Source: Trichosphaerium sp. ATCC 40318 (lineage: Eukaryota > Protista > Tubulinea). From it: a stretch of 64,000 bases of DNA. The stretch lies in contig JALMLS010000213.1 in NCBI GenBank assembly GCA_038496445.1, positions 1 through 64,000 of the forward strand, in the 5' to 3' direction. Position 1 is the stretch's first letter. Every line of letters begins with the position of its first letter. Positions 95 to 62,905 of the stretch are shown one piece after another. The notes beneath the pieces are model-generated. The model made no database searches and was not told the origin of the DNA. It saw only the letters and a list, made by a program, of their open reading frames with translations. A program made the position numbers and the translations under genes.

Positions 95-1583
95 ATGGTA
101 ACACAAAATACAACACAAAATGTCCGCCGAACAACAAAAAAGAAGAGAAAGTTCAATGCAACAAAGGAAACAAACACAGCAACGAAAGAAACCACAATTC
201 GCTTTGTTAGTGGCCATTTCACGTTCACACTTTCAGAGAAGCTTCTCAACATGTATTCAACATCTCTTTTCACATCTAAAGTACATGCCAAATCACTACA
301 AGATAATTCATCTGAAACAACCATTTTGGAGGAGTGTAGGTACGTAAAACACTTTTGACGCGTATTTACTAACTATCGGGATGGTAGTCACTCAAAACAT
401 CTTCCAAAAATTTTGAGTTTGATGAGAAATGAAGAAATCACAAGTTTTGAAGATCCTGCGGGGTTGTGGTTTGCAGCAGAATACTATGGTGTACCTATTG
501 TTTGGAAAGATATAAACATGCCTTATGGCACGTGTTTAATATGCTCCTTCAATTAGTAACAACTTCATAGAGCTCAAGTTATCAATAATCGCAACTACGC
601 ACATTCTTGAGCAAGTGCGAGATCTGTGGGGAAGGTTTCAAGCTTTGTTTCACCAGGCTGTGAGTGTAAACAAACATAAAACAAATTATTTGATTGTATT
701 AGGCATCAGTTGGTCGTAACAAGAGGAAAATTTGTGCTGTAAAGAGCCATGCGGCAGGTAGTACTATATATTTAAAGACAGAATTAGGTAGAAGTATAAT
801 GGAAAAGTACTTTAAACAATGTGACTTGGTACAAGATGTGTGATGACACCCAAAAAATAATTACTAAATTAGCACTACAAATACACAAAAGGCGATGATG
901 GTAGTGACAATTTAACAATATTTTGGAGTGATGATGAAGTTGGACCTGAAGTTGTAAACAAAAGATTAATACAAGCAATTTCAGGTAAAAAATGGGATTA
1001 TCCTAACTTGAGTACGGTTTTTGGTTTATCATTTAATGTTCACTCCCTGATATGAACTTATTTAGCGGAAGAGTTGTGGGCCATATCACAAAATGTAAGA
1101 TGGAACACGTTGTATTATGACAAACGTTATTATTCCAAAGACTACCTGTACCAGGCATCAATTGGGTCGCAAGAATTTGTAGTAATGTATCATACATTCC
1201 TGAAAAAAGTTCCAGAAGTGTATTATGATTACATTTTTAAAGCACAGTACGTTTTAAAACATTCTCCTGTCAACCTAATTTGCGTCATAGTCCAGACGAC
1301 ATTTGTTGCCCAAAGAACATTATGAAAGATGGAGACGCGCGCAAAAAGATTGTTAGTATATTGTGTTTATTGTTGAAAACAGCAGTATGTACAATATGAG
1401 GTAAATTGTGTATTAACTATTGTATAGACCTTTGTTAAAGAAGAGATAGTGAGTGAAAACACAATCATTTTCACGTTATCCATTCCACGGGTTAATGAAG
1501 CCCTTGTAGATAAGTTTTTACCAATTTATCTCACACCATATGAGAAACGGCGAAAGGACATAAAAAAAATATTTTATTGTTAG
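95..1583 (+). CDS. Clade A NLS-BTB/POZ family protein, 8 exons (copy A1)
   Basis: Spliced by hand through all 8 exons without a stop: ATG 95 (MVTQNTTQNVRRTTKKKRKFN), FVSGHFTFTLSEKLL, HSKHLPKILSLMR, WFAAEYYGV, KTELGR, EELWAISQ, LPIYLTPY, TAG 1581-1583. Intron 2 donor is GC (528). Confidence 0.85.
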
Positions 1584-2310
1584 ATAAGGAGAGAGACCTT
1601 GTATCATGATAAATGAAGAACATTGTATGTTGAATACAGGTTGTACTCTTTTTTTGAAATCTACGGGTTCCTACTGTATTGGCTTGAGTTTCTGATCTAC
1701 ACGTTCAGAAAAAAGTTGCTACAAAAGTAAATGCCACACGGACCACTCAACACATATCCGTAATTCTAAACGCTCAAGGTATCTCCAGAGTGGCCTTGGT
1801 ACTCTAACACTATAGTATCTATAATTGACAGATAATGCGTATTCTCTTCACGAACAATGGCAGGAGAAAAATAATATACATATTGAAGATAACTACCTAA
1901 CGCCCCCAAAGACTGAGCGACTTTCCTCCCACTGTATTGTATTGTCAAAGTCGGTCCAAACTAACTGACAAAATCTACTACCAAGAAACCTATTAAAACC
2001 GTACGCCAAAAAAAACCGCTGTTTACATACAAACAAGTTTCATAAACGAATTTTTTGTGTTTTAGTTTTTTAAACAACACCCACGCGGTTTTTCACGCGT
2101 AGCAACCTCATTGCGATCTACAACTAGAGTTTATGTTTCGTTTACTGTTTATATTGTCTCACCCTTCTCCAGTGAACTCTTTATTACATAATAAACGCTA
2201 CTTACCTACTCCGCTTCTAATCAAACAAAACAATCAATTCATTGAACTATAAATATAGAAATAGTTATGCTTCGCAAATAACTAACAAAAATAGTTACAA
2301 TCAGTATTTG

Positions 2311-3541
2311 ATGTCAGACCACCAGCCAGTTCCTGAGAGGTTAGCATAACATCACTTTTTTCGCTAGTATGTTAACGTAGCTTAGAGCGAGCATATTGGA
2401 CTTCCCTACAGAGATTTTAGCTCACATATTACGTCAACTTACAATAAGACGTGTTGACTGTTGTCAAACCTGTCGCCGGTTTGCTTCTATCATCCATGAT
2501 ATTATTGGATACAATCATGTTGTTATTAGAACTGTAGACCAAGCCAAAGCACTTGTAAAACATAGAGGTGCTCTCCAGCATACCACAATCAGGGTTCTTA
2601 GTGATGATGTTGGTAAAGTTGTCAATGAACTTGGCGGTGTTCATACTATTAATATTAGCGGCTCTTATGCTCTAAAAGGCAAGCATATAGCAGTACTTTC
2701 TGGGGTACATACTATAAATCTTATGGGTTGTTGCAATCTTACAGATGAAGGTATTAAAGCGCTTTCCGGGGTATATTCGATAAATCTTCAATCTTGTCCT
2801 AGTATAACAGATGAGGGAGTTAAAGCACTTGCTGGCGTTCATACAATCAATCTTCGTTCTTGTTATGGAATAACAGACGAGGGAGTTAAAGCACTTGCTG
2901 GCGTTCATACAATCGATCTTTGTTCTTGTTTTAAACTGACAGATGAAGGTATTAAAGCACTCGCTGGTGTATATTCTATTAATCTTAGTTCTTGTAATAA
3001 ACTGACAGATGAAGGTATTAAGCATCTTTCCGGTGTACATACAATTGATCTCAGTTCTTGTTGTAACTTGACAGATGAAAGTCTTAAACATCTTTCTGGT
3101 GTACATACAATTGATATTGGATCTTGTGATATTACTGATGAAGGTATTAAAGCACTCAAAGGTGTTCATAATATTATAATTAGATATTGTGCCAAGGTTA
3201 CAGATGAGGGTATTAAACATCTTTCTGGTGTACACACAATTGATATTGGTTATTGTCATGGTATTACAAACGAAGGCTACAAGTCACTGTCTGGTGTTCA
3301 TATCATTGATGTTTCTGGTTGCCGTGTTACAAATGAAGGACTTAAAGCCTTCGCTGGTGTTCATAAAATTAAATTATTCTCTTGTAAAGGGATAACAGAT
3401 GCAGGTTTGAAGGCATTGGCTGGTGTTCATACCGCTGAACTTATATATTGTCCAAATATAACAGCCGAAGGTATTGCTAAATGGCTTAGTGGTGTTAACA
3501 CTAAAACAAGCTATTTCGGTATCACCTTCAAAGATAAATAA
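2311..3541 (+). CDS. F-box / leucine-rich repeat protein (FBXL-like) with ~13 22-aa LRRs
   Basis: ORF 2396-3541 begins with an F-box-like ILDFPTEILAHILRQL...CCQTCRRF, followed by repeats of consensus LAGVHTINLSSCxKLTDEGIKA. ATG 2311 joins in frame via a 46-nt intron 2340-2385 (GTTAGC...CTTAG). Confidence 0.88.
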
Positions 3542-5713: not shown

Positions 5714-7184
5714 ATGTCCAAACCACAAAAAAAGAAGAGAAAATTGAATCCAAAGACGGAAACGACCGTAAAAGCGCCAAACCCATCCAAAGAAACAACA
5801 GACACCCCAACTCATTTTCAATGTGGAGATTTTAGCTTTACACTATCAACGGAGCTTCTAAATGCATATCCATCATCTCTTTTCGCGTCTAAAGTACATT
5901 TTGAATCATTACAAGATAATTCAACTAAAACAACTATTTTGGAGGAATGTAGGCGCGTCATATACCTCCAACCAATTGTGCAAGTGCATACTAATTTTTT
6001 AACGTTAAAGCCATTCGTATTACCTTACTACAATCTTGAGTTTGATGAGAAATGAAGAAATGACGAGTATCGAAGATCCTGCAGGTTTATGGTTTGCAGC
6101 GGAATACTATGGCGGCCCCATTGTTTGGGAAGATATAAATATGCCTTATTGCACGTGCTTATTGTTTTCAGAACTGACATCAAGTCTTAGTAAGCAAATT
6201 ACAAGTTCAAGCAGCTGCGTACATTTTCGACCAAATACGCACACTTTGGGAATACTTACAGGATTCATTAAGTGATAGGGTACTTGTTGCACACTAAACG
6301 AAGCTAATTTGAAAAAGGCAGTCTCAGGTTTCAATTTCCAAAATGTGTGTGGCGCTATGAGCTATGCAAATGGCAGGCAGTTATTTTTAAAGACAGAACT
6401 TGGTAGAACTGCATTAGCAAAGTACTTCAAACAATGCAATTTGGTATGAATAAACCCAATTGGTTCCGGGACTTTAACCAAGTTTAGCACTACAAATATA
6501 CCAAAGATAAACGTGGCATAGACTTCTTGACTGTTGTGTGGACAGACAATGAAGTTGGACCTGAAGTTGTGAAGCGGAGGTGTATTGATGCAATTTCAGG
6601 AAACTTTTGGGAGTATCCAAACTTGAGTACGCCTTATTGTCTTTTACTAAATCTCATTTCTGATGTAATTGTAAGCGGAAGAGTTGTGGGCTAAATCTCA
6701 ATATATAAGATGGCGTGAGCTATATAGTATAAGAGATAGTATACGCGAAGCCTACGTGGAACAGGCAGCACTTGGGTCGTTAAAATTTGTGTTATTGTAT
6801 CATTCAGGTGCTGCAGATGAGCCTCCTAAAGACATTTACAACGACTATTTGATAACGCACTAGTACGTTACAGGGAAAACGTTCAAACTAACTCTGCATT
6901 AGTCAAACACGTATAGTTTCTTTTAAATCTGTTGTGGAAGATGAACAGACACGTAGAAAACTTGGAAGTCTGTTGTGTATGTTTGTAGAAGGAGCAGTAT
7001 GTTAACTTCGCTCTTTATTGTAGTAACATTCATGTAGACTTTTGTTGAAGACAAGGTTCACAACAAACATAATTTTACAATCACAATATCAATTCCACCT
7101 GTAAAGGAGGCTATTCTTGATGGCTTTTTACCAATATTTCTTACCCCATACAAGCATGGAAAACGTCCTTTAAATAGGTACTGA
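5714..7184 (+). CDS. Clade A NLS-BTB family protein (A2)
   Basis: MSKPQKKKRKLNP...FQCGDFSFTLS; same 8-exon layout; GC donors at introns 1 and 2; TGA 7182-7184. Confidence 0.82.
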
Positions 7185-9125: not shown

Positions 9126-10599
9126 ATGTCTGAACCGCAAAAAAAGAGGAGAAAACTGAACCCAAAGGTTGATACAGGAGTGACGTCAACTGAAACTACA
9201 ACAGAAAGCGCAACACAGTTCAAATGTGGAGATTTTAGCTTCACGCTATCGGAGGAGCTACTCAACGCGTACTCATCATCTCTTTTCGCGTCTAAAGTAC
9301 ATTTTGAATCACTACAAGATAATTCATCAACAAAAACCCTTTTGGAGGAATGCAGGTACATTTGAAGACTCCTTCATATGTTTAATGCGTATATCACTGT
9401 TATTAACGAAAATCAGTCATTCGAAGTATCTACCAACAATCTTGAGTTTTATGAAAAAGGAAGTACTGCCGAGTGTCGAAGATCCTGCAAATTTATGGCT
9501 TGCGGCTGAATACTATGGTGTACCTGTCGAATGGAAAAAACTAAATATGCTTGTGGGCACGTGTATTAATTTTCAACAAGCTTACGGCAATCTAGTGAAC
9601 AAGCTTCCAATTATGGCCACTACATTCCTTCTAGAAACAATACGAAAAGCTTTCAAGTCCCTTAAATCTACCCTACGAACAGCTGTAAACTTTAAGTACA
9701 ACACTATTGAGTTCTGATCTTATGTATAGGCGGCCTTAGGTAAAACTATGATCATTATTGGCACTGAAAGAGACACTATTTATTTACAAACAGAATATGG
9801 CAGAACTGCTTTAGAAAAGTACTGTAGCAACTATGCCTTGGTATGGTTTCTACAAGTACTTCGATTCACACTAACCGTTTGTTAGCATGTTAAATACACA
9901 CAAAATAAAGATGAACGTTTTGAAGCAACAATTTGTTGGAGTGATGAAGAAGTTGGAACTAAACTTGTAGTAACGAGATGTATGAATGCAATTTCAGGAC
10001 AATTTTGGGATTTTGCAAACTTGAGTATGCTTGTACTTGTGTTAATGTACATTAACTGAAGTACCTGTTTTAGCTGAAGAATTATGGGCTAAATCTCAGT
10101 ATTATACATGGAACACGGTATTCAAAAAAAGAGACAGGATGCGTCCACTCTATCTTCAAAAGGGAACAAAAGGAGCATCAACATTTACAGTACTTTGTCG
10201 TGATTGGAAGTATAAAAATCCAACAAGAATACCATGCGATTTTATGCTTGACACTCAGTACTGCATTCTCTCTATCAAGTATTTATAACTGACTTTGTTA
10301 CAGTCCAAAAGATATAGCCAATGCTGAGGAACTTGTAAACAATCCACGTATGAGAAGCAAGCTCAGACGTTTGTTGTGTGCCTTCGTCGAAATAGCAGTA
10401 TGTTGATTTTACTCTCAGTCCTTTTGTACTAACCAGTTGTAAATAGACTTTTAAGGAAGAAAAAGTACACCACGAAGACGTGCTTACCATCACATTGTCA
10501 TATCCAAAAATCGATGAAGCTATGCTTGACAATTATCTACCAATCTTTTGTACTGAACCATATAAAAACGATCAAACAATTCCGAAGACACCTAGATAG
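9126..10599 (+). CDS. Clade A NLS-BTB family protein (A3)
   Basis: MSEPQKKRRKLNP; conserved exon motifs; TAG 10597-10599. Confidence 0.82.
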
Positions 10600-10714: not shown

Positions 10715-12194
10715 CTATCTCTTAGGTTTAGGAAGGGTTTTGTCTTTTTGATAAATTGCTCTATAAATTGGTAAATATGCATCAAGCATAGCTTCATCAA
10801 TTTTTGGAAACGACAATGTGATGGTAAATACATCTTCACTGTATATCTTTTCTTCCAAAAACGTCTAATATCAAATTGTCAGACAGGAACGGGTGAGAGA
10901 AACTACTAAACATACGGCTATATCCAAGAACACACAAAACAAAACAACAAGCTTTCCTCGCATGAGTTTGTTTTTCACAAGCGCCTTTACGTTAGGTATA
11001 TCACCTGGACTACAAATAGTCAGATAAAAAACACCTTTTAGAGCGCGTACTGGGTGTCAAGTATAAAATCATTAGGTATATTTGCTGCACTGTCATGCTT
11101 CCAATCACGACAAAGTATAACAAATCTTGATGCTCCTGTTGTTCCCTTAGCAAGATACTCTGGACGTACCCAGTCTTTTTTTCTATAAACTGTGTGCCAG
11201 ATATAATATTGTGATTTGGCCCATAACTCTTCAGCTAAAACAACATACTTCAGTTAATGTGCATTAACACAAGTACAAGCATACTCAAGTTTTCAAAATC
11301 CCAAAATTTTCCTGATATTGCTGCAATACACCTCTTCTTTACAAGTTTAGGTCCAACTTCAAAATCACTCCAACAAACTGTTGCTTCTATTTTTTCGTCC
11401 TTATCTTTAGTATATTTAACATGCTAGTAAACAGTTAGTTTGCCAGAAAGCGCGTGTGGAAATCATACCAAAGAATAGTCATTGCAAAACTTTTCTAAGG
11501 CAGTTCTACCAAATTTTGTCTGTAAAAATACGCAATCTTTTTCATTGCCAATAATCCTCGTAGTTATACCAATGGCCGCCTAATACATAAATTAGAATTC
11601 ATGTATATGTAAGTTGTAGAAAAAAGCTTACTGCTTTTCGTAGCGCGCATTCAAGGACCGTCACCTCTTTTTGTATTTCTGCTAACAGGAATGTAACTGC
11701 CACAATAGGAAGCTTGTTAGCTACGTTGTTGTAAGTTCGCTGAATAATAACAAGCACGTGCCCACAAGCATATTTAGTTTTTTCCATTGAATTGGTACAC
11801 CATAGTATTCAGCTGCAAGCCATAAATTTGCAGGATCTTCGACACTTGGCAGTACTTCTTTTTTCATAAAACTCAAGATTGTCGGTAGATACTTTGAATG
11901 ACTGGTTTTTCGTTATTTCAAGGGAGCTTAGTATTTGCATTAGTCTCATACGTACTTGCATTCCTCCAACAGAGTTATTTTAGCTGAATTATCTTGTAAT
12001 GACTCAAAATGTACTTTAGACGCAAAAAGAGATGATGAGTACGCGTTGAGTAGCTCCTCCGATAGTGTGAAGCTAAAATCACCACATTTAAACTGTGTTG
12101 CGCTTTGTGCTGTTGATACTGACGCTTTTGTCTTTGCTACGCTTTTTTCAGGGATTGGGTTCAGTTTTCGCTTCTTTTTTTGTGGTTCAGACAT
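10715..12194 (-). CDS. Clade A NLS-BTB family protein (A4)
   Basis: ORF 11946-12194 is exon 1; downstream exons are recognisable on the minus strand; ends ...KTLPKPKR*. Confidence 0.82.
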
Positions 12195-12759: not shown

Positions 12760-14281
12760 TTAGTCTACAAAGTCTAAGTGTGGAAAGTGAAGTGTCACAG
12801 GAATTGTTTCGTCTGTTTGATAAGGTTCAGGACCATAGATAGGCAGATACGCATCAATCATTGCTTCATCAATTTTTGGATAAAGAAATATGAAGATAAA
12901 TGCGTCTTCTTTGACTATCTTTTCTCGTGCAAACATCTTATCACAGCGTTAGTAATAATGCTAGCGGTTTTTTGAGAAAACTCAAGGATAACTTACTGCT
13001 ACTTCCAAGAAGGCACACATTATATTACGGAGCTTTTTCCGCATTTGTGGATTTTTCACAAGGTCCAATGCATTGGGAATATCTTTTGGACTGTAACAGA
13101 AGTCAGTAATAAATAATTGGATAGAGAATGCAGTACTGAGTGTCAAACATAAAGTCGCATGTTACTCCATGTCTGTCATACTTCCAATCACGACAAAGTA
13201 CTGTAAACGTTGATGCTCCTTTTGTTCCCCGTTGAAGAAAGCCTTGTAGTAGCCTATATTTTTTTTTGAATACTGTATTCCATATGTAGTATTGAGATTT
13301 GGCCCATAACTCTTCAGCTAGAACAACATACTTCAGGTAAGGTACATTAACACAAGTACAAGCATACTCAAGTTGGCAAAATCCCAAAATTTTCCTGAAA
13401 TTGCTGCAATACACCTCTTCTTTACAACTTCAGGCCCAACATCGTCATCACTCCAACTAATTGCTGCTTCAAAACGGTTATCTTTATTCTTTGTAAATGT
13501 AACATGCTAATAAGTGAGGTTAGTTTGTACTGTGAAGCCCTAGTTGTGAACGTACCAAGGCGGCGCTGTCACAGTACTTTTCTAAAGCAGTTCTACCAAA
13601 TCTTGTCTGAACAAATACAGTGTCTGTTTCATTACCAATAACACTCATAGTTCTACCAACAAATGCCTAGTAGATCAAGTCAGCATTTTGTCAGGGCGAA
13701 AGAGTCATAGTGAAAGAACTTGCTGCTTTTCTTAGTTTAGATGCAAGAGACCTCAACTTTTTTTGTATTTCTTTGAGAAGGTATGTAGTTGCTACAATTG
13801 GAAGCTTGTGTACTAGATTGTTGTTAGTTCGCTAAACAGTAACGCACACGTGCCCACAAGCATATTTATATGCCTCCACACAACAGGTACGCCATAGTAT
13901 TCAGCTGCAAACCATAAGTTTGCAGGATCTTCAATACTTGTCTGTGCTTCTTTTCTCATCAAACTCAAGATTCTCGATAGATACTTTGAATGCCTGGTTT
14001 ATCAACAAAAGTAAGTACTACTAGTCTACGTGCGATGCCTACCTGCATTCCTCCAAAAGCGTTATTTCTGATGAGTTATCTTGTAATGACTCAAAATGTA
14101 CTTTAGACGCGAAAAGAGATGATGGATACTCATTTAGAAGCTCCTTCGATAGTGTGAAGCTAAAATCACCACATTTAAACTGTATTGAGCTTAATATAGG
14201 TTGTACTGATGTTTCTGTTTTAGTTACGCTTGTTTCAGCTGTTGGATTCAATTTTCGCTTCTTTTGTTGAGGTTCAGACAT
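12760..14281 (-). CDS. Clade A NLS-BTB family protein (A5)
   Basis: MSEPQQKKRKLNPTAETS; EELWAKSQYYIW exon; ends HFPHLDFVD*. Confidence 0.82.
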
Positions 14282-14524: not shown

Positions 14525-15968
14525 CTATATCCTAGGTACTGTTTTGTCTTTTTGATATGTGGATCTATAGATAGGTAGATAGGCATCAAGCATAGCCTCA
14601 TCAATTTTTGGAAATGACAATGTGATGGTAAATACATTTGGAGTGTATATCTTTTCTTCCACAAACGTCTAATCAATTGTTAGCATAAGGAATAGACATA
14701 AAAGACAAACGCGAAACATACTGCTATATGCAACAGGATACAAAGCAAACCAACAAGCTTTCCTCGCATGAGTGGATTTTTCACAAGCGCCTTTACATTA
14801 GCTATATCATCTGGACTACAAATAGTTAGATAAAAAACACTTTATAGCAACGTACTGAGTATTAAGTATAAAATCATTAGGTATATTTGCTGCGCTGGTA
14901 TGCTTCCAATCACGACAAAGTATAATAAACCTTGATGCTCCTTGTGTTCCCTTAGCAAGATATTCCGGACGTACCCCTTCTTTTTTGTTAAAAATTGTGT
15001 GCCATGTACAATACTGAGATTTGGCCCATAACTCTTCTGCTAAAACAAGTATTAGGGAGTTTACTTAAAGATCAAGAACATACTCAAGTTTTGAAAATCC
15101 CAAAATTTTCCTGCAATTGCATCAATACCCCTCTTGTTTACAAGTTGAGGTCCAACTTCAGTGTCACTCCAACAAACTGTTGCTTCAATTTTTCCTTCGC
15201 TATCTTTTGTATATTTAACATGCTAACAGATGGGTTAGTTGTACTGTCAAGTACCAGCTGGAACCGTACCAAGGCACAGTCTTCACAGAACTTTTCTAAA
15301 GCAGTTCTACCAAATTTTGTATGGACAAATACGCAGTCTTTTTCATTACCGATAACACTTGTAGTTTTACCTGTAGCCGCCTATATACAAGATTGGAATT
15401 CTGTGTAAGTAGAAAAAAGCTTACGACACTTCTTAAGGTAGATTCCAGGGACTGAAACTCTTTTTGTATTTCTGATAGAAGGTATGTAATAACCATAATT
15501 GGAAGCTTGTTAGCTAGATTGGTCGTAAGCTTACTTAACCATTGCAAGCACGTGCCCACAGTCATATTTAGTGTTTCCCATCTAATAGGTACACCATAGT
15601 ATTCAGCTGCAAACCATAAACCTGCAGGATCTTCTATACTTGAGCGTTTTTCTCTTTTCATCAAACTCAAGATTGTCGGTAGATACTTTGAATGACTGGT
15701 TTTTTATCAGCGACACACGCATTGTGAATTATGAAGGAGTCTTTACGCACCTGCATTCCTCCAAAAGCGTTGTTGTTGATGAATTATCTTGTAGTGATTC
15801 AAAATGAACTTTAGACGCAAAAAAAGATGATGGATATGCGTTGAGAAGCTCCTCCGATAGTGTGAAGCTAAAATCTCCACAGTTAAACTGTATTGAGGTT
15901 TCTGTTTTTGCTGCGCTTGTTTCAGCTGTTGGATTCAATTTTCGCTTCTTTTGTTGAGGTTCAGACAT
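14525..15968 (-). CDS. Clade A NLS-BTB family protein (A6)
   Basis: Exon 1 is ORF 15729-15968; EDPAGLWFAAEYYGV; ends KDKTVPRI*. Confidence 0.82.
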
Positions 15969-18089: not shown

Positions 18090-18790
18090 CTTGGTTCTTG
18101 TACAATGTCGCGTGTTTGCATCTTTGTTTGGATATGCTCGAGACTAGGGTCGTACTGATTTTCGACATTTTGCTACACGTGCTCTTCTAATTTTTGCATA
18201 TGCCGAGACCCTGATTTGAGAAAAGTCGTCGTGGCTATCAAACAAATGAGGTTTGAAATATTATACCAGATACGCACATTGGTATGTCAAAGTGAATGTT
18301 TAGCACCACGCCTGTGATTTGGCGTTCAGTATTCGTTTTCGAAAAACCAAACTCGTAAGCTTGTATGTCTACCTGTTCTTCATATGCAATGGCAATGGCT
18401 ATGTCATATGCTCTAACAGGCTGCCAGTTTACAAATACAGCGGTTGCCCACAACCTCTCGCCTAGACACAGTAAATAATGAAAATAGATCAGTAACGTAT
18501 ACTGTACAAACAATTCTGAAACCCATTAGACACATGGAAACCTTGCCGCATATGTACTGACAAGGATGTTAAATTTGAATCCTTATCCAGATAGAGATAA
18601 GTATTTGTTTTAGAATCTACCTTACATGCTATGTTATGCATGATGCTTATCGGTGATTAACAAATAAAACACTATGTCAAAATAGGTGGCCAAAAAGGTG
18701 CCAATGGGCACCACGTAGCGCCATTTCCCTGAAACCCACTAATTTTCTCCCATTATTCATAACCACCATTATCCGTAACACCTAGGTTCA
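18090..18790 (-). pseudogene. Clade B fragment
   Basis: Exon GERLWATAVFVNWQPVRAYD...VVLNIHFDIP (ORF 18238-18513) is paralogous to 21376-21645. No intact 5' part found. Confidence 0.55.
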
Positions 18791-19210
18791 ACGTTTGATT
18801 TATTTTGCAGATAGCTATTTTGTAGTTGAACAATATAACACTAAATTGTTTACCAAATACCAAATACTTGGCAAGACGATAGATTTGTTATCATCACTTA
18901 CATGTTTGTAGACTATCAACAGTCACTGCAATGCTTCAAAATTGCTAGTTTTGCGCTAGTGTGTCAAGTTTAAAATGTTACAAGATTCACCGAAATATTA
19001 GCATTGCGTGTCATACGATTCAAGTGTCAAATGTCATTTTGTTCAGTGAAAGTAAAGTGTCACCTTTCAAAGTGAACAACTGATTCAAAACTGGTAGGCA
19101 TCTATAGCATCAATGTAGTTACTAAACCTAAAGGAGGATTCATTTGACATTTACCATTCCGTTTTCGGAATTTATTCATACAATTAAACCTAATAGTTTA
19201 TGTACTATTT

Positions 19211-52435: not shown

Positions 52436-53902
52436 ATGAGCAACGAACCTCCGAGCAAGAAGAGAAAGTTTTCTCACAACCATGTCTTAAATGGTGTTTT
52501 GCATAAGGATAAAAAGTCCAACTGTTTAGAAACCCCGCAACAGTTTGTCAATGGAAGTTTCCATTTTGAACTCTCCCACGAACTACTCAACAAGCATGCG
52601 CAATCGCTTTTTACAATAGTAAGTAAAGGATTGGGGTCTAAAATGGAACGTGTCTTAAACGAAGAAGGGGAGATTGTATTAATCGAGACAAGGTACGCTG
52701 TTTGTTTTCTTTTCGATTTGTTATAACAAGTCAGATACTCAGAGGCACTCAAAATAATCGTTGCCTTAATGAAAGGGCAACCAATTGACGTCAACTGGAC
52801 CAAAATCTGCGGGGATGTGGTTTTTGCTATGAATTTTTATGGCGTGGACTTCGACTTTAGCGATGAGAGACTTCCTCTAGGTACTGTAGCGTGAATAATA
52901 ATTGGTAACAATTGTTAGGTTTACGCACATGTGTTTATCGTACTACACTGCTCGTACACAAGATCAGAGAGTTGTGGAACACTGTCGATTCATTATTATC
53001 TCGTGAGGTGCGTTTGCTCTGTTGGCCTGTTTAAAAACAAACGCTTCTTAGGCAAAAAAAGGTAATATGAGTTGCTTTCATACCTTGGCAGATAATTCGC
53101 CTTTGTTATCACCTGAAGGATGGGCTGCGTTGATAAGATTTTTTGCAGGATTTACCTATAATCTAGTAAGTTACAGCGGAATAAACCATCTACTCACGAA
53201 ACTAGACTATTGAGCGCATTGGAGAAACTAGGATTAAATTTTTGTGGGACGAAGGTGAGTTATCCCTAGGGAAGCTCTACAGTAACTACGACAATGTACT
53301 ACGTGCCACCAATTGGGAATCTTTGTTTGTCAGCTATCGTACGCCTAGTAGCTAATAATGATTAACCTTTGTTAGGAGAACGTTTGTGGGCATCAACAGT
53401 ACACAGTCAATGGAGTAGGATTACCGATAAAAAGCAAGAAATTCTTGATTCATTCGTGAGGGCATCACAAATGTATCGTGACTACTTCACCGTTTGTGTT
53501 TTACACTCTTTGCCATTGGCGGATGTGTATGAGCCTCTAGTAGCTGATTGCCATCTATTTGTGTATGTACCTTTGTACTACACAATAAATACTAATTGAC
53601 TCTGTAGGCCTAATGCAATGTTTGTAACGGGAAAGCTGATTTACAACATGCATGCTAGACGCTTGGTACAATATTTTGATGACATTTTGGAAAACGTACG
53701 AGTACAAACCTAAACAATTCTAACGTATAAGGCAACACTTGTCTCCAAACACTTGGAAGCAGACGCTGGTTATGAATATCTTGTTGTAAAATTTGCCTTT
53801 GCTACCTTGACTCCTGGACAACAGGATTCATTTTACGAGACCTGTCAAACTGGCGAAGGTGCAAGTTCTTTCATTCAAACGCCTACCAATAGCTGTATAT
53901 GA
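52436..53902 (+). CDS. Clade B NLS-BTB-like protein
   Basis: MSNEPPSKKRKF; FVNGSFHFELSHELLNKHAQSLF; FAMNFYGV; GERLWASTVHSQW; TGA 53900-53902. Confidence 0.72.
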
Positions 53903-54040: not shown

Positions 54041-55582
54041 ATGACTGAGCCACAAAAGAAGAGAAAATTAAACGTACAGGCGGAAGGAATGACAAATAGT
54101 TGTGAACCGCAACAAAAGAAGAGGAAACTGAATACAAAGACTGAGACAACGACTGAAATACCAGAAACAGCAACAGAAAGTTCAATACAGTTTAAATGTG
54201 GTGATTTTAGCTTTACGTTATCGGAAGAGCTTCTAAACGCACATTCATCATCTCTTTTCGCGTCTAAAGTACATTTTGAATCACTGCAAGATAATTCGTC
54301 AACAACGACCGTTTTGGAGGAATGTAGGTACGTTCGATCCTATCAAGGTTAAAGAGCGCTCACTTGCGTACCAGCCATTCGAATTATCTTCCAACGATTG
54401 TGAGTTTGATGAAAAACGAAGAACAGAAGAGTATTAAAGACGCTTCCAATTTATGGTTTGCAGCAGAATACTATGGTGTACCCATTGTTTGGGCAGATAT
54501 AAATATGGATCTAAGCACGTGCTAAACAGCTACTCCCATTTGTTTTGACAACGCTATAGAGTACAAGTTGCCAGTTTTAGCGGTTACAAACATTCTCGCA
54601 CGAATACGGACCTGTTGGAAGAGTCTACAAGAAGAACTACGAGGTCCTGTAAGTTATGCTCAACTCACTTAGTGTCTGGTAGCCTGATAAGAAATAGGCA
54701 GAGACTGGTCTCAATTCTGTAGTTATTGGTATGACAAAGAACAATGCGGAACACCCAACAAAGTATTTAAAGACTGAACTGGGTAGACACGCACTTGAAA
54801 AGTACTTTAAATACTGTGACTTGGTATGATGTTACATAAGTGTTGTTTTTATTAATCCTTTAAAGCACTACAAATATACAACAGATTTTCGTGGCAGAGA
54901 AAAAATAACTCTGTTTTGGACTGACAATGAAGTTCCACCGGAAGTTGTGTACGAAAGATGTATTGATGTAATTGCAGGTAGATTCTGGGAGTTTGCAAAT
55001 TTGAGTAAGCTAAAATACAAGGAGTGTATTCTAATGTACCCGCTCAGCTGAAGAATTATGGGCTAAATCACAATTTAAAAGATGGAACTTTCTTTATGAG
55101 GATAACGAGGCTATACGCAAAGGTTACTTACAAGAAGCAGTTATAGGAGGTTTGGAATTCATCATCTTATATCATACCATTGGCACAGAGTATCCTAAAG
55201 ATGTACACTATGATCATGTGATATCTACTTCGTATGTTTCCGGTTGTAAAAACACTGTATCAAATGATTGTATGGTAGGGCAAACCACATATGTTCTGTA
55301 AAGGCTGTAGCAAACGATGAAGAGCTACGGAAAAAACTTAGTTCACTATTATCTGAATTTGTAGAAGTAGCAGTACGTTTTTTTGCTTTACTTCCTTACC
55401 TTAGAATAATATGTTGATTAATTTAACGAAATACACAGACTGCAGGTGGAGAAAAGGTTTACAATGAAAATAACGTGACAATAACATTAAAAATTCCAAA
55501 AGTAAGTAAAGATATGGTTGATGATTTTTTGCCAATGTACCTCGCACCATACAAGCAACCTCCAAAAAAACGTGAAAAATAA
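54041..55582 (+). CDS. Clade A NLS-BTB family protein with duplicated NLS (A19)
   Basis: MTEPQKKRKLN...EPQQKKRKLN; all exon motifs present; TAA 55580-55582. Confidence 0.82.
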
Positions 55583-55900: not shown

Positions 55901-57323
55901 TTAATGTGGTGACCCTGGAGGTCGGTGTCGATCATATGGAGTAAGGTATAGTGGTAAAAAATCATCGAGCATAGAGTCTTCAACTTTTGGAATTGACACT
56001 GTGATTGAGTACATCTCTTTAGTATGTATCTTGTCTTCTATGAAAGTCTGGTGCCAACAAAATATTACAATGCAGGTAAAAAACCAAGAAACGTACTGCT
56101 ACCTCTAAGAATGTGCACAATATACTTGTAATTTTTTTCCGCATATGTGCATAACGTATAACAGTTGCTGCGCAGGTAAGGCTCATTCGGCTACAACAAG
56201 TAAATACAACAAAATACAAATACTAGCATACTTGGGTTCCATCTTGTAATCGTAGGGAATGTTTATCTGATCCTTCATATTGTGATATAAAAAAGTAAAT
56301 TGTAATGCTCCTGTTGATGCATGTTGGATATAGGCATTACGTATAGCTGCCTTATTGCAATATAGTTCGTTCCATCTTGTAAATTGTGCTCTTGCCCATA
56401 GCTCTTCCGCTAAAGACAATCAGAAACATTTGGTAGATAAAGATATAACGTACTCAAGTTTGCATACAGCCATTTTTTTCCTGAAATTGCATCAATACGT
56501 CTTGCTTTTACAACCTCAGCTCCAACTTCGTAGTCAGTCCAAATTACAGTTACTAGTGTCCTTTTAGCTTCAGCTATTCGCGTGAAATGCTAGTAGGAGA
56601 TAAGGTGACTAGTTAATATCTACATCATACCAAGTTACATTGTGCAAAGTACTTTGCAAATGCAGCTCTACCAAGCTCTGTATTTAAATATTTTTGGTCT
56701 CTCTCACTACAAACAGGTGCTGACATATCCCCAGCATCTGCCTATTACAGTTAGATGTGGTTACAGGTAAGCAATACCTTTCTTTTTAGGAAAGATTGTA
56801 GTATTTCCCATAAATCTCGTATTTGTTCAAAAATACCTGTTACAGTAATGACTCCCAGCTTACTTGCTATGTAGGTGTCAATATGTAGTTTAGAAGACAA
56901 TGCTTAGCACGTGCCAAAAGGCATATTTATATCTTTCCAAACGATAGACACACCATAGTATTCTGCTGCAAACCACAAACTAGCAGGATCTTTGATACTC
57001 GACATTTCCTCGTTTTTCATCAAACTCAATATTGTTGGGAGATACTTTGAATGGCTGTTGTTTTCGTTATTGCAAGTATGTTATAACTACAACGACATCC
57101 AAGCGTAGACGTACCTACATTCCTCCAATAGCGTTGTTTTTGTTGAATTATCTTGTAATGATTCAAAATGTACTTTAGACGCGAAAAGAGATGATGAATA
57201 CGCGTTTAGAAGGTCCTCCGATAGTGCAAAGCTAAAATCACCACATTTAAATTGTATTAGTGTTGGTTTTGCTGTTTCTGTCTTTGGATTTAATTTCCTC
57301 TTCTTTTTACGCGGTTCGGACAT
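55901..57323 (-). CDS. Clade A NLS-BTB family protein (A20), closest to A17
   Basis: MSEPRKKKRKLNP; exon 6 is nearly identical to that of A17; ends HRPPGSPH*. Confidence 0.8.
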
Positions 57324-57585: not shown

Positions 57586-59318
57586 ATGAGCGAACCCAAA
57601 CGCAACAGATCAAATATAGGCAATGATATCTACGAACAAGAACATTTTCACACCCGCACATCACCTCCAGCTGAAAATTCAACCCCACCTCGATCACCTG
57701 CTTATAGTTACAACGCAGCATCACGCTCTAGCTTTCCGCCTACCCCACCTGGATCTCCTGGTTATGAACCCTCTTCACTCATTCATACCCCTGCGTCACC
57801 TTCGCCTACCCCACCTGGCTCACCCTACTTTATTACCACCCCAACATCACCTTCGTATTCACAAACAGATTGCAATCAATCAGAGGAACAAAGTATCGAA
57901 TGGTACATTTATTAAACGGTGCTCCGTTACTCACTATTGTAGCGATCTGGATACATACTACAGAACTGTAGTGTTGCCACTGGGCCCACCTCCAAGAACA
58001 CCTGGTCGCCCTGTACTATTCGTTGAACAGGACTTGCATTTTGAGTTATCAGAAGAAATACTTCGTATCTATCGCACTTCGTACTTTGCTAATTTATACA
58101 ACGATATAAACCAAAACGTGAATGCCTATGGGGAAATTATACTTCCACCTTCAAGGTATGTTGGTTGATTTTAACCACTCTTTAAAACTACTTAACACAG
58201 ATTCCATGAACTTCTTGAACAACTTGTACTTCTTATGAAGGATGAAAATGGCCAGCGAGCCATTCCTCATAACCTGATGTATCTTGCAGCAACCCATTAT
58301 GGTATTGACCCTAGAATAATAACACCTGAGCGTACTTAATGAGGGCGTATCTTTAGATACTAAGAACTTTACTAGCAACAAAGGAAATGCTTCTTAAACT
58401 AACAATAGATTACTTCAGATTATTCTTAAATGAGCTGAATGATAACATGCAGAAAACGGTGCGTTGATTATAGTAATGGGCTAGTAGTAATTTGATTGAT
58501 TTAAATAGGCAACAGATGGTCATTTTTCGTACACAAAAAGGCTACATGAACGCAATCCGATTATAACTGATAACTTTGCTCTTCTGCAACAATATCTGGG
58601 TACCCACAAGTGCTAACGTTTATCCGATAAGCTCACAATTATGTAAAACACGATGATGGTACATTCTCTCTTACTATTCATTGGAACGAGGCTAGACTAG
58701 ATCAAGATGATCATGGTATCAAATAATTGGCTAAAGTTTGCTGTTCTATGTACATGAGCTAAGGCAACCAATATTGACTTTAGTGTAGGCAAAAGACTTT
58801 ATGCGAAAGCTATTCATGCTAGATGGGAAGAGGTAAAACGTCATGACACACGCGTTCACCAAGAGTTCTTGAACCAAACATCACCATATGAACGAAGTAT
58901 ATTTAGAGTAGCTCTAATTTACGCTAGCAATGCTGAAATCATCAATTACGATAATTTCCAATTCGATAGACACGTGAACTACAGAGTGCCTCTGTACGTA
59001 TTATATTCTGGTTGCCAACTCAGCTTATAATAGATCAAACACACTTTTCTTTGCCCAGCACGAAAATGCAGTTATAGAGGATAATATTCACTGTATGAAG
59101 TTGCGCGACCATTATTGTAAACTCTTCGATACTGTACGTGTACAAGAATACAATGTAAAGCTCATTACATTGTTAAGGTATGCTGTAATGACGTTATTGC
59201 CGAGGAAAATAGCTGCCTTATGACGTTTATTGTTCCAAAAGTAGAGATAGTAGAAAAATATATTCGTGAGAGCCATAACAAACTCAACGTGTATGACATG
59301 TGCCAACCCAATTATTAA
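57586..59318 (+). CDS. Clade B Pro/Ser-rich BTB-like protein, paralogue of 41877; 3' half possibly disrupted
   Basis: SP/TP-rich N-terminus; PLGPPPRTPGRPVLFVEQD. Deletions relative to the 41877 copy near 58600 and 58705 suggest decay. Confidence 0.55.
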
Positions 59319-59513: not shown

Positions 59514-61031
59514 CTAATTGCTTGCTTGTTTAATTGTCTTAGGAACCCGTAGTTGATCATATGGTGTGAGATACAGTGGCATATAATCTTCAAGCACAGA
59601 TTTGGTAATTTCTGGGATTGACAATGTGATTGTTAACGTGTCATCGCTGTAGATCTTTTCTTCCACACAAGTCTTTAAAATTATTAGCAAAGCAAAAGCA
59701 GTAAAAAACCGTGACAAGTAAATAGTACTGCATTGATAAAACGTACTGCTACTTCCAAGAATGCACACATTAGACTAACAAGCTTTCTGCGCTTCAACTG
59801 ATCATTGACTATGTTTTTAACACAACATATAGTGCCTTGTCTACAACATGTGCATTACCATAATACAGAATTCCAAAACTTTAGACATACCGAACAGTAA
59901 TGAGGTAATCATAGTAAACATCAGCTGGAAGGTCTATGCTTGACGAATGATACATAATAACAAATTTTAATGATCCTATTGCTGCCTCTCTTACATAAGC
60001 ATTGCGTAAAGGCGGTCTCTGGTAGTTCAAAAAGTTCCATCTTTTGTATTGAGATTTGGCCCATAGTTCTTCAGCTAAAGAGGTACATAAGGAACAAAGG
60101 CACTAAATACAAACATACTTAAGTTGGCAAACTTCCAAAATTTACCAGCAACCGCCCTACTACATCTCTCTTGTACAACTTCAAGTCCAACTTCATTGTC
60201 TGTCCAAAACACTGCCATTTGTTCTATGCCATTTTTATCATTGATACACCTACAGTGCTATATACAATGAGGTTAGGTTACTGCAATCACTTGTTAACTA
60301 ATACCAAGTTACAGTGTTTGAAGTACTGCTCCACCGCAGCTCTCCCGAACTCTGTCTTTAAATATCGTGTTGGAGGTTTCGCATTACCCTTTACTTCTCC
60401 AATACAGTACGATTCAAAGCCTTCCTCCGCCTGGGTATAAATTAGTCTTATAGTATTGTATGGGTACCAAAGTATACAGGGGCGGTAAGTTCATCTTGTA
60501 GCTTTTCCCAAAGCTTTTTGACTTGTTCAAGGCTGTGTGTAACTGCAACAATTGTAATCTTCTTCGCTACACGTTTGTGAGTAGAAGTACTTTGGCCGTC
60601 ACGTGTACAAAAAGGCATAGGCAAGTCTTTCCAAACAATGGGTATGCCATAGTATTCAGCTGCAAACCATAAATTAGTGGGATCGTCAACGATCTCCATT
60701 CGCTCTCGTTTCATAAGTTTCAAGATAATTGGAAGAAACTTTGAATGGCTGTTTGTTGGTACTGTCAGCTTATACGCGTGAAAGAGGGTTATGGTACGTG
60801 CCTACATTCCTCCAGAATCGTTGTTTTTGAAGAATTATCGTGTAGTGATTCGAAGTGGAGTTTAGACGCAAACAACGATGAAGGGTATGCGTTGAGAAGC
60901 TGTTCTGGAAGCGTAAAGCTAAAATCACCACATTTAAACTGTGCTGGTGGTTTTTCTGCGTTTATAATCGCTCTAGCCGTTGTATCCATCTTTGGATTCA
61001 GTTTTCTCTTCTTTTGTTGTGGTTCAGACAT
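59514..61031 (-). CDS. Clade A NLS-BTB family protein (A21)
   Basis: Exon 1 is ORF 60789-61031; the last exon lies in ORF 59514-59768; intron 1 donor GC, intron 2 donor GT. Confidence 0.8.
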
Positions 61032-61398
61032 AGAAACGGGATTTCAGTCAATAGAAATGGCGAAAAATTTGTGCACAGCTTGAATGATACGGACAATACT
61101 TCAAAGAATGAGCTAACGAACTTTTTAGCTTTTGTCAGAGTAGACAGAACGTTTGATAGGCAGTGAATTATCTTGTAGTGATTCAAAGTGGAGTGTAAAC
61201 GCAAACAACGATTTTTAATTTTATTTCCGGAGAGCGTGTCGCCTTGGTTTAGCATCAATGCTGGGTATAGAATGCTTTTGTGTAACGAAGAGGATACTAT
61301 ATTTTATACATAAGTTGTAGGTCGCTACAAAGCGTTACATCTCGGACTCTCACGGAGCCCGTTGAGTCTCGGCTTACTGAATATCCTCTTATACTGGA

Positions 61399-62905
61399 CT
61401 ACTCCTGCTTAATTCGTTCTCGATCATATGGTGTGACGTATAGTGGTAAAAAATCATCAAGAATAGCTTTATCAATTTCAGGTATTGCAAATGTGATTGT
61501 AAAAATGTTTTCATCGTAGAGCTTTTCTTCAACGAAAGTCTATGGTTAATAATTAACATTCAATGTAAGTGAGAACAAGAAACGTACTGCAACACCCAAC
61601 AACACAACAAGTACCCCAGCTAGCTTGTCTCGCAACATTTTGTTGCTCAGCATAGTTTCAACTGAACATGCATGCTTTGGACTAAAAGGGCAGGTTAGTG
61701 TTCGCTTTTAGATTAATGCTAGGCATACTCAGCACGAATGCGGTAATTGCAGTTGATGTGGTTGGGTTCTACTTCGGTTGAATGATACAAAACAATAAAT
61801 TGCAACTCTCCTAGCGATGACACGTTTGCAAATGCTGCACGTAATTTTGGACCCCCAGAGTACAGATCATTCCATCTTTCATATTGCATCTTGGCCCACA
61901 GCTCTTCTGCTAAGCGGGGTCACAAAACAATAGTAGTAAAGATAAGTTAATGTACTCAAGGTTGCATATTCCCATTTGTGACCTGCAATGGATTTAACAA
62001 AATTTTCTTTTATTACTTTAACTCCAACTTCAGTGTCTGTCCAAAACACTGCTACTTCTTCATTGCCATCTTTATCTTTAATGTATTTATAGTGCTTGTA
62101 ATGAGATTAGGTAACCGCCAAAGTTATTTGTCTCGTACCAAGCTACAAAGGTCAAAGTACTTCTCCATCGCAGCTCTACCAAACTCTGTCCTTAAAAATA
62201 GTGTTGGATGTTTCGCATTACTGTTTATACCGCCAATAGAATAAGAATGTAAACCTTTCTTTGCCTGTTTTCGAGTTAGGAATGTAGTGAGTTCCATCAA
62301 CGCACAAGAACAATAAGTTCATCTTGTAATCTTTCCCAGAGCTCTTGTACTTGCTCGAGAATATATGTTACAGCTGTAATTACTATTCTATTCGCTACAA
62401 AGGATGTTAGTACCTAAAAGACCTTGAGACCACGTGTACGATAAAGCATTTTTATCTCTCTCCACGCAATAGGTACGCCATAATATTGTGCCGCATAATA
62501 TAAATTGGAGGCATCTTTAACACCAGCTATGCTTTCTTTTTTCATTATACTCACGATTGTCGGAAGATGTTTTGAATGGCTACAATCGATATTTAAACTC
62601 ATTACTAGCTAAAGTACACGGACCTGCATTCCTCTAAAAGCGTTGTTGATTCTGACGATGAATTATCTTGTAGTGATTCAAAATGTACTTTAGACGCGAA
62701 AAGAGACGATGAATACGCGTCGAGAAGCTCTTCCGATAACGTAAAGCTAAAATCACCACATTTAAACTGTATTGAACTTTCTGTTGCTGTTTCTGTTGTT
62801 TCAGTGGTCGTATTAAGTTTCCTCTTGTTGCGGTTCAGGTTCTTCCTTTGTTGCAACTTCTGGTGTTGAATTCAGTTTCCTCTTATTTTTGTGTGGTTCA
62901 GACAT
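61399..62905 (-). pseudogene. Clade A copy with duplicated NLS and a frameshift in exon 1 (A22)
   Basis: ATG 62905 reads MSEPHKNKRKLNSTPEVATKEEPEPQQEET*. The BTB continues in another frame (ORF 62605-62856) and the remaining exons look intact, so an assembly indel is possible. Confidence 0.6.

What the first reader, a model, noticed from the sequence alone, without database searches (positions are those of the whole stretch)
95..62905. ~31-locus array of nuclear BTB proteins with a constant adaptor and variable C-terminus: candidate diversifying Cullin-3 adaptor (immune-like) repertoire
Seen: ~23 clade A and ~8 clade B loci in 63 kb, in both orientations, with many pseudogenes (birth-and-death pattern). 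The exon-1 BTB core (FKCGDFSFTLS...SSLFASKVHFESLQDN) is almost invariant, while exons 4-7 vary strongly. After EELWA the copies read e.g. NTVFKKRDRMRPLYLQK / HTVYRKKDWVRPEYLAK / NTVYAKKPRFLSGYLQR / NELYCNKTAIRNAYIQH / SKIHKQKNRIHLAYMKQ. Clade A copies start with an SV40-like NLS. Established: BTB proteins of the KCTD type often act as Cul3 substrate adaptors, and expanded F-box and MATH-BTB families in nematodes and plants have this conserved-adaptor/variable-binder pattern. Inference: a protist nuclear surveillance system that targets foreign (viral or transposon) proteins through a C-terminal domain I cannot assign to a known family.
Basis: partly seen in the sequence, partly recalled or inferred. 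Interest (0 to 1): 0.85.

Follow-up and report, generated by a model that had tools for sequence, protein, structure and literature searches.

The report
Tandem array of nuclear BTB-like genes
A protist genome carries about 31 neighbouring copies of a gene for a probably nuclear protein with a conserved BTB-like front half and a more variable, unrecognised back half; the copies evolve under ordinary purifying selection, so there is no sign of an immune-like diversifying system.

Summary
The window is almost filled by one gene superfamily: 24 clade-A loci and 7 divergent (clade-B-like) loci, on both strands. An earlier scan note (s1-390528) says the array continues past the window's end.

- The gene has 8 exons, not 7. 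A hidden 33-42 nt intron, often with a GC donor, accounts for most apparent frameshifts.
- 12 copies can be modelled as intact, 7 full-length copies are disrupted, and the rest are fragments.

The constant-front, variable-back pattern is real: amino-acid identity is 0.83 in the exon-1 core and 0.44 in the C-terminal part.

The BTB call rests only on weak but concordant evidence: Atlas features, an SHKBP1 BTB alignment at E=0.2, and KCTD BTB domains as the top but non-significant fold hits. Pfam and a search of 1.84 billion proteins found nothing.

The C-terminal ~255 aa match nothing, but could only be tested exon by exon.

Three tests found no diversifying selection. Global omega is 0.37, no 15-codon window exceeds 0.8, no site has a posterior above 0.5, and 2dlnL is 0.21. 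Among neighbours, exons 1-2 and exons 3-8 have different nearest relatives, which indicates gene conversion.

Verdict: a lineage-restricted, birth-and-death BTB-like family. Cul3-adaptor function is plausible but untested, and the immune-like reading is not supported.

The parts
9126..10599 (+). Reference clade-A gene, intact, 381 aa. Exons: 9126-9355, 9417-9562, 9596-9684, 9730-9840, 9886-10024, 10074-10257, 10304-10397, 10447-10599. The hidden intron 2 is 9563-9595.
   Evidence: Splice sites read by hand; protein-to-genome models
5714..7184 (+). Clade-A gene; can be modelled intact if GC donors are allowed at introns 1 and 2
10715..12194 (-). Clade-A gene, intact model (GC donor at intron 2)
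12760..14281 (-). Clade-A gene, intact model
14525..15968 (-). Clade-A gene, intact model
16425..17950 (-). Clade-A gene, intact model (all donors GT)
27713..29174 (+). Clade-A gene, intact model (GC donors at introns 1 and 2)
35842..37385 (-). Clade-A gene, intact model. Its intron 1 is in frame and stop-free, so 36882-37409 served as the read-through probe for searches and folding.
40127..41569 (-). Clade-A gene, intact model
55901..57323 (-). Clade-A gene, intact model; close paralogue of the 40127 gene (dS 0.43, omega 0.25)
59514..61031 (-). Clade-A gene, intact model if GC donors are allowed
61399..62905 (-). Clade-A gene, intact model
125..1583 (+). Clade-A pseudogene: the ATG is out of frame with the BTB-like core, there is a stop at the intron-2 junction, and the core has diverged
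20055..21263 (-). Clade-A copy lacking exon 1 (5' truncated); exons 2-8 are open
24346..25794 (-). Clade-A full-length copy with 1 frameshift
29783..31225 (+). Clade-A full-length copy with at least 1 frameshift
31372..32881 (+). Clade-A full-length copy with 2 frameshifts
34160..35645 (-). Clade-A full-length copy with 2 frameshifts
54041..55582 (+). Clade-A full-length copy with a stop at the intron-2 junction; the NLS motif is duplicated in frame at the N-terminus
23709..24051 (-). Clade-A fragment (exons 1-2, with stop and frameshifts)
33465..33996 (+). Clade-A fragment (exon 1 plus an exon-8-like piece)
43800..44584 (-). Degraded clade-A copy (exon 1-2 remnant with frameshifts, and an exon-8 remnant)
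41870..43554 (+). Clade-B gene B1. Same exon order as clade A, with a proline-rich N-terminus and the core ..LFVEQDFHF..SYFATLY..
57586..59315 (+). Clade-B gene B2 (all eight exon equivalents found)
52436..53899 (+). Divergent member (NLS-like start, BTB-like exons 1-2, ERLWA exon)
26267..27312 (-). Divergent member; its exons 2 and 3 are contiguous, so it has no intron 2
37802..38955 (-). Divergent member (exon-1-like, exon-2-like and ERLWA exons)
21379..22504 (-). Divergent member (exon 1-like ..ILFVMRDYDFSL..SMFA.., ERLWA exon)
18241..19591 (-). Divergent or chimeric remnant: an ERLWA exon, plus a 126-aa ORF that joins exon-5-like and exon-7/8-like pieces

Best explanation
This is a lineage-restricted, tandemly amplified gene family in a short-intron protist genome, with at least 31 loci in 63 kb.

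Each gene has 8 exons and encodes a protein of about 375 aa with four parts:
- an N-terminal monopartite NLS-like motif (MSEPxKKKRKLNP);
- a short variable linker;
- a divergent BTB/T1 (KCTD-like) domain split between exons 1 and 2;
- an amphipathic helix and about 225 further residues (exons 3-8) that match no known family but keep conserved anchor motifs (GR.A..KY, W.D.EVG, NLTEELWAKSQY..W, R.KL, P.K...LD..LP.Y).

Shown: the family grows and decays by local duplication, pseudogenisation and gene conversion. Every region is under purifying selection, strongest on the NLS and the BTB-like core.

Inferred: the proteins are nuclear and oligomerise through the BTB-like domain. Each paralogue's C-terminal domain binds its own partner, most plausibly as a Cullin-3 substrate adaptor, or otherwise as a plain oligomeric scaffold.
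For: Array and gene structure. The 136 modelled introns have a median length of 46 nt and a GTAYGT-type donor consensus.

The hidden intron 2 is real:
- It sits at the same position in all clade-A copies, starts with GT or GC and ends with AG.
- Its length varies from 33 to 42 nt and is usually not a multiple of 3.
- The exons downstream remain under purifying selection even in a pair where both copies have GC donors (40127/55901: omega 0.14-0.60 for exons 3-8).
- One divergent paralogue has exons 2 and 3 contiguous.

BTB-like domain:
- Atlas language-model features: best hit 0.92, 59 of 100 nearest clusters are PF00651 BTB, and all ten best hits with a family share a clan.
- The family profile aligns end to end with the BTB domain of SHKBP1 (4crh), profile positions 5-95, E=0.2. 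That score exceeds all 1000 shuffles of the same target.
- The AlphaFold model has the element order beta-beta-alpha-alpha-[gap]-alpha-alpha-alpha.
- KCTD15, KCTD1 and KCTD16 BTB/T1 domains fill the top of the Foldseek list.

Selection:
- Close pairs, by exon: omega 0.17 for the exon-1 core, 0.35 for exon 2 and 0.22-0.45 for exons 3-8.
- NLS codons: 0.11.
- Global omega 0.37, with no support for beta>alpha classes.

Gene conversion: within the 9126-21263 subcluster, exons 1-2 and exons 3-8 have different nearest neighbours.

Lineage restriction:
- No hit in the word-indexed searches of 5.8 billion proteins.
- No hit in 1.84 billion representative proteins.
- No relative in JGI metagenome contigs.
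- No relative in IMG/VR viral contigs.
Against: No BTB test reached significance.
- Pfam found nothing on single exons, on the read-through, or on the divergent members.
- phmmer against PDB found nothing.
- hhalign and hmmsearch against the window's own bona fide BTB_2 protein (7814-8605) found nothing.

The folded sequence carried 18 intron-encoded residues in the middle of the domain, and the model was mediocre (pLDDT 64.6).

Nuclear location, oligomerisation and Cul3 binding are inferred only. There is no expression evidence, because no sequencing run was listed.

Many KCTD-type BTB proteins do not bind Cul3 (own knowledge).
Confidence: 0.55

Rival explanations
1. The array is an immune-like repertoire of Cullin-3 adaptors. 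A constant BTB recruits Cul3, and C-terminal domains diversifying under positive selection recognise foreign (viral or transposon) nuclear proteins.
For: The array is a tandem birth-and-death family with pseudogenes. The front half is conserved and the back half is variable. The start is NLS-like. Mixing of 5' and 3' halves between copies could create new combinations. The organism appears to have many other BTB and F-box expansions, according to unchecked scan notes.
Against: No positive selection was found. Every exon and every 15-codon window has omega below 1 in close pairs. No site has p<0.05 in the SLAC-like count. The FUBAR-like grid gives 2dlnL of 0.21 for classes with beta>alpha, and a maximum site posterior of 0.49. 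Variation is spread evenly over exons 3-8 between conserved anchor motifs, not concentrated in hypervariable patches. Cul3 binding is untested.
Confidence: 0.1
2. The N-terminal module is not a BTB domain. This is an orphan nuclear protein family of unknown fold, unrelated to ubiquitin ligases, and the BTB resemblance is a chance pattern of hydrophobic residues.
For: All homology and fold tests are non-significant. Atlas shares only 128 of 256 features with the best BTB cluster, below the 170 typical of true family members.
Against: Three independent weak signals point to the same fold class: Atlas, the PDB profile hit on SHKBP1 spanning the whole domain, and KCTD T1 domains dominating the Foldseek list. 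The order of secondary-structure elements fits BTB. The divergent paralogues keep the same pattern of hydrophobic positions.
Confidence: 0.2
3. These are BTB-containing nuclear regulators rather than ligase adaptors. As in KCTD1/KCTD15 or BTB transcription factors, the BTB only oligomerises the protein, and the C-terminal domain binds DNA, chromatin or transcription factors.
For: The NLS is conserved and under strong constraint (omega 0.11). The closest fold hits, KCTD1 and KCTD15, are Cul3-independent regulators of AP-2 (own knowledge). The whole protein is under purifying selection.
Against: No DNA-binding motif or Pfam domain was found in the C-terminal pieces. The large copy number and the pseudogene turnover are unusual for core regulators.
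Confidence: 0.12
4. The copies are cargo of a mobile or virus-derived element that has amplified locally.
For: Copy number is high, copies lie in both orientations, and many are dead. BTB and F-box/LRR expansions are typical of giant viruses and amoeba symbionts (own knowledge; PMC4209131 turned up in the paper search).
Against: All copies carry 7 spliceosomal introns at conserved positions. Self-comparison shows no terminal repeats or transposase around the units. No relatives were found in IMG/VR contigs. Divergence between copies is old (dS 0.24 to above 1).
Confidence: 0.03

Closest known systems
KCTD / T1-type BTB proteins (Pfam PF02214 BTB_2; e.g. SHKBP1, KCTD1, KCTD15, KCTD16)
   Same: The N-terminal domain of about 95 aa is followed by a family-specific C-terminal domain. 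The best, though non-significant, sequence and fold matches are to these BTB domains. The pattern of hydrophobic positions is shared: F.CG.F.F.LS..LL...SSLF..., LP.IL..MK, AAEYYG.
   Different: There is no significant HMM match. The N-terminus carries an NLS. The C-terminal region of about 255 aa is far larger than KCTD C-terminal domains and unrelated in sequence. The family is amplified about 30-fold in tandem.
Expanded, positively selected adaptor families: MATH-BTB (BATH) and F-box genes of Caenorhabditis, and MATH-BTB genes of grasses
   Same: They are tandem arrays with birth-and-death turnover and pseudogenes, and combine a conserved ligase-binding module with a more variable partner-binding module (own knowledge; PMC4091423 and PMC1257465 listed).
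   Different: In those families the substrate-binding domain shows site-specific positive selection. Here none was detected. The variable domain here is not MATH or any recognised fold.
The window's own canonical BTB_2 gene (7814-8605, intronless, 264 aa)
   Same: It lies inside the array and has an N-terminal T1-type BTB domain (PF02214, E 1.7e-8) followed by an unassigned C-terminal domain.
   Different: It has no detectable similarity to the family by HMM or hhalign, no introns and no NLS start. It is not a recent relative.

Membership tests
BTB/POZ superfamily (Pfam PF00651 BTB, PF02214 BTB_2) | Significant match to a BTB or BTB_2 profile HMM | tested here: not met
   No BTB family at E up to 10 was found on exon 1, exon 2, the exon 1-2 read-through, or the divergent members. 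Caveat: the domain is split by an intron, and a spliced protein could not be handed to the tool.
BTB/POZ superfamily (Pfam PF00651 BTB, PF02214 BTB_2) | Sequence-profile similarity to a solved BTB domain across the whole domain | tested here: inconclusive
   Profile A2 against PDB: SHKBP1 BTB (4crh), profile positions 5-95 against chain residues 23-115, E=0.2, 15 bits. The spliced profile scored 10 bits, above all 1000 shuffles of that target.
BTB/POZ superfamily (Pfam PF00651 BTB, PF02214 BTB_2) | BTB core fold (three-stranded sheet packed on about five helices) | tested here: inconclusive
Cullin-3 substrate adaptors | Direct binding of the BTB domain to the Cul3 N-terminal domain | not testable with these tools
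Diversifying (immune-like) adaptor repertoires such as nematode MATH-BTB and F-box families | Tandem birth-and-death array with pseudogenes | tested here: met
   31 loci were found: 12 intact models, 7 disrupted full-length copies, and the rest fragments or divergent members.
Diversifying (immune-like) adaptor repertoires such as nematode MATH-BTB and F-box families | Positive selection (omega above 1) at sites of the partner-binding domain | tested here: not met
   NG86 on close pairs gave omega 0.22-0.45 for exons 3-8 and at most 0.8 in any 15-codon window. The SLAC-like count found no site at p<0.05. The FUBAR-like grid gave 2dlnL of 0.21 and a maximum posterior of 0.49. Episodic selection was not tested, and recombination was not partitioned.
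Nuclear proteins with a classical monopartite NLS | A K-K/R-x-K/R basic cluster, conserved | tested here: met
   The KKKRKLNP motif at residues 5-13 has 0.85 mean identity and omega about 0.11. Actual import was not tested.

The most novel reading that the evidence does not exclude
The C-terminal ~255 aa form a new partner-recognition fold attached to a divergent Cul3-binding BTB domain. The array would then be a nuclear adaptor repertoire that gains new specificities through gene birth and death and through gene conversion that re-pairs 5' (BTB) and 3' (recognition) halves, rather than through point-wise positive selection. Such a system could monitor foreign or mobile-element proteins in the nucleus of this protist.
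Probability: 0.1. Interest if true: 0.7.

Novelty: new variant of a known kind. Interest (0 to 1): 0.33.

Why it matters
Lineage-specific expansions of BTB, F-box and similar adaptor genes are common, so the array itself is not surprising. Two things are new. The ~255-aa C-terminal region and the very divergent BTB-like domain found no relatives in any collection searched (the C-terminal part only as pieces against Pfam, PDB, the Atlas and viral contigs). And the family is a negative example: a constant-module, variable-module tandem array that looks immune-like on inspection but shows only purifying selection plus gene conversion. If the C-terminal domain proves to be a new substrate-recognition fold, it would add a new architecture to the Cul3-adaptor repertoire. 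The gene models also suggest unusually frequent GC-AG introns and mini-introns of 33-42 nt, which matters for annotating this genome.

Tried and rejected
1. Ungapped reading of 'exon 2' made most copies look frameshifted at one spot. I rejected this in favour of a hidden 33-42 nt intron.

2. A shortest-path ORF search with few introns gave spurious long introns and was dropped.

3. Fragment-based MAFFT alignments meant to feed profile tools were misassembled and not used: A1, A3 and A5. A2 was nearly correct and A4 covers a single exon, so both were used.

4. Spliced proteins could not be given to Pfam, AlphaFold or the large protein searches, which accept only references to contiguous window sequence. 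The C-terminal domain was therefore never searched or folded as a whole.

5. The following found no relatives:
   - both word-indexed searches with family probes;
   - the word-indexed search with the neighbouring BTB_2 ORF;
   - the exact-protein look-up;
   - the exhaustive representative search;
   - the metagenome scans;
   - the viral scans.

6. No RNA or DNA sequencing run was listed for this locus, so read laying was not used and splicing and expression remain unverified.

7. Adding the divergent paralogues to the BTB profile did not raise the SHKBP1 score.

9. The organism could not be identified. Scan notes on insertional mitochondrial RNA editing hint at a myxomycete-like protist. 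The one paper search, which included Physarum polycephalum as a term, turned up nothing on such a family.

Full report
**What is in the window**

The window has 36-40% GC and no tRNA or Rfam match. It is eukaryotic, with short spliceosomal introns.

Six-frame motif scans found 20 copies of the exon-1 core and 19 EELWA motifs on both strands. I spliced one copy by hand (9126-10599, +). tblastn with its protein mapped 24 clade-A loci. I then wrote a protein-to-genome aligner with intron, frameshift and split-codon states and applied it to every locus.

An HMM of the spliced family, run against all open segments outside those loci, was combined with tblastn of clade-B exons. Together they found 7 more divergent loci with the same order of exon equivalents:
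- an NLS-like or proline-rich start;
- a ..F....F.F.L....L......F.. core;
- an RF/RYxxLLxxIxxLMK exon;
- a W.D/W.E exon;
- an ERLWA....W exon;
- a ..P.K/V.. tail.

All five quoted peptides are present. An earlier scan note (s1-390528) says the array runs on past the window's end. I did not test that.

**Gene structure**

Nearly all copies seemed to have a frameshift or stop just after ..NM..GT. Aligning the DNA showed a variable stretch of 33-42 nt at that point. It begins right after GGCACGT with GT or GC and ends in AG. Treating it as a phase-1 intron removes those lesions.

Three observations support the intron:
- Its length is usually not a multiple of three.
- The downstream exons are under purifying selection even in a pair where both copies have GC donors (40127/55901: omega 0.14-0.60 for exons 3-8).
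- One divergent paralogue (26267-27312) has exons 2 and 3 contiguous.

The gene therefore has 8 exons. The 136 modelled introns have a median length of 46 nt. Of these, 117 have GT donors and 19 have GC donors, and several of the latter read GCACGT where the consensus is GTACGT.

Each locus was then aligned to the best-scoring of seven family references and checked for an ATG start and a terminal stop. On that basis 12 loci are intact models, 7 full-length loci are disrupted and the rest are fragments. One of the disrupted loci lacks exon 1. Birth and death is real, but there are fewer pseudogenes than a 7-exon reading implies. No sequencing run was listed for the locus, so none of the splicing is confirmed by transcripts.

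**Is the front half a BTB domain?**

The negative results:
- Pfam found nothing on exons, on the one stop-free read-through of intron 1 (36882-37409, -), or on the divergent members.
- phmmer against PDB found nothing.
- Word-indexed searches of 5.8 billion proteins found nothing.
- An exhaustive phmmer search of 1.84 billion representative proteins found nothing at E up to 0.001.
- Comparison with the window's own canonical BTB_2 protein (7814-8605; PF02214 at 1.7e-8) found nothing.

The positive but weak results:
- Atlas language-model features put 59 of the 100 nearest clusters in PF00651 BTB, with a best score of 0.92 but only 128 shared features.
- A family profile (alignment A2) aligned over its whole length with the BTB domain of SHKBP1, at E=0.2. 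This is above all 1000 shuffles of that target, although the target had been pre-selected.
- AlphaFold2 on the read-through gave pLDDT 64.6. The model carries 18 intron-encoded residues in the loop before helix 3. The order of its elements fits a T1-type BTB domain, except that strand 3 is not modelled.
- KCTD15, KCTD1 and KCTD16 BTB domains fill the top of the Foldseek list, but at E 1-3 and TM about 0.22.

I take the domain to be a very divergent BTB/T1 fold, with probability about 0.7. Membership is not established.

**The back half**

I tested exon 6, an exon 6-7 read-through, an exon 7-8 read-through and an exon-6 profile. None gave a Pfam, PDB or Atlas match, and there were no relatives in viral contigs. 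No enzyme or transposon signature was seen.

The family alignment shows conserved anchor motifs separated by stretches of moderate variability, not hypervariable patches.

**Selection**

Across all pairs, synonymous differences are near saturation (pS 0.41-0.67), so I used the six closest pairs (dS 0.24-0.85).

Pooled Nei-Gojobori estimates of omega:

| Region | omega |
|---|---|
| exon-1 core | 0.17 |
| exon 2 | 0.35 |
| exons 3-8 | 0.22-0.45 |
| disordered linker | 0.69 |

No 15-codon window exceeds 0.80.

A parsimony (SLAC-like) count on 18 copies found no site with excess non-synonymous change at p<0.05. It found 88 negatively selected sites, and omega of about 0.11 for the NLS codons.

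I also fitted a FUBAR-like grid mixture (GY94 with F3x4 codon frequencies, 7 x 15 alpha/beta classes, weights fitted by EM) to 13 open copies: the 12 intact models plus the 5'-truncated 20055 copy. It gave a global omega of 0.37. Allowing beta>alpha classes improved the fit by 2dlnL = 0.21, and the highest site posterior was 0.49. Posterior mean beta/alpha is 0.25 for the BTB-like part and 0.37 for the C-terminal part.

Episodic selection and surface clustering remain untested.

**Why the front is constant**

The main cause is purifying selection. Synonymous divergence in exon 1 is only modestly lower than elsewhere (alpha 0.93 against 1.27; dS 0.37 against 0.45-0.63).

Gene conversion also contributes. 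In the 9126-21263 subcluster, exons 1-2 of a copy are closest to one neighbour and exons 3-8 to another. For example, copy 9126 is closest to 10718 in the 5' part and to 20058 in the 3' part. Per-exon dS within single pairs also varies several-fold. This agrees with scan note s1-383753.

**Interpretation**

The family is a lineage-restricted set of probably nuclear, probably oligomeric BTB-like proteins with an orphan C-terminal domain, evolving by duplication, decay and conversion under constraint.

A Cul3-adaptor role is a reasonable inference from the architecture, but many T1-type BTB proteins do not bind Cul3 (own knowledge). Nothing here supports an arms-race function.

The closest analogues are KCTD proteins for architecture, and the nematode and grass MATH-BTB arrays for genomic behaviour. 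This family differs from the latter in lacking detectable positive selection. I found no description of it in the one paper search I ran.

**Other content of the window**
- an F-box/LRR gene at about 2300-3540;
- the intronless BTB_2 gene at 7814-8605;
- a 3.4-kb tandem duplication (44742-48130 and 48448-51820, 86% identical) carrying an H-type-lectin-like ORF.

Noticed in passing
window 9563-9595 and the equivalent site in every clade-A locus (e.g. 11721-11755, 41097-41134, 56867-56908): There is a mini-intron of 33-42 nt, phase 1, whose donor is GC in about half of the copies. Overall, 19 of 136 modelled introns (14%) have GC donors, several reading GCACGT where the consensus is GTACGT. This is unusually frequent if real, and needs transcript data.
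   Followed up: partly
window 44742-48130 and 48448-51820: A 3.4-kb tandem duplication (86% identical) interrupts the array. Each unit carries an ORF of about 220 aa (44919-45547 and 48601-49266, minus strand). The ORF has no Pfam hit, but its Atlas features match clusters containing H-type lectin domains (score 0.95, 204-207 shared features).
   Followed up: partly
window 7814-8605 (+): An intronless 264-aa ORF has a canonical T1-type BTB_2 domain (PF02214, E 1.7e-8) and an unassigned C-terminal region of about 170 aa. It sits inside the array but shows no detectable relation to the family, and it found no homologues in the word-indexed search.
   Followed up: partly
window ~2300-3540 (+): An F-box plus leucine-rich-repeat gene (LRR_6 at 8.5e-33, F-box-like at 4.6e-7). 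It has a short first exon and one intron, and the repeats show internal DNA similarity. It is a second kind of ubiquitin-ligase adaptor next to the array.
   Followed up: no
window 54041-54160 (+): Locus 54041 carries two in-frame copies of the NLS motif (M.EPQKKRKLN ... EPQQKKRKLN). This is a small internal duplication of the N-terminus.
   Followed up: no
window 19214-19591 (-): A 126-aa open frame joins an exon-5-like piece (..YTKG..TIYWSDQELD..) directly to exon-7/8-like pieces. Part of it is 80% identical to 28939-29187 of the 27713 gene. It looks like a deletion or recombination remnant.
   Followed up: no
window 26884-27129 (-): In the divergent member at 26267-27312, the equivalents of exons 2 and 3 are contiguous. 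Intron 2 was therefore either gained in clade A or lost in this copy.
   Followed up: no
window 9126-21263: The six neighbouring copies are mosaics. The nearest relative of exons 1-2 differs from that of exons 3-8, and dS differs several-fold between exons of the same pair.
   Followed up: partly
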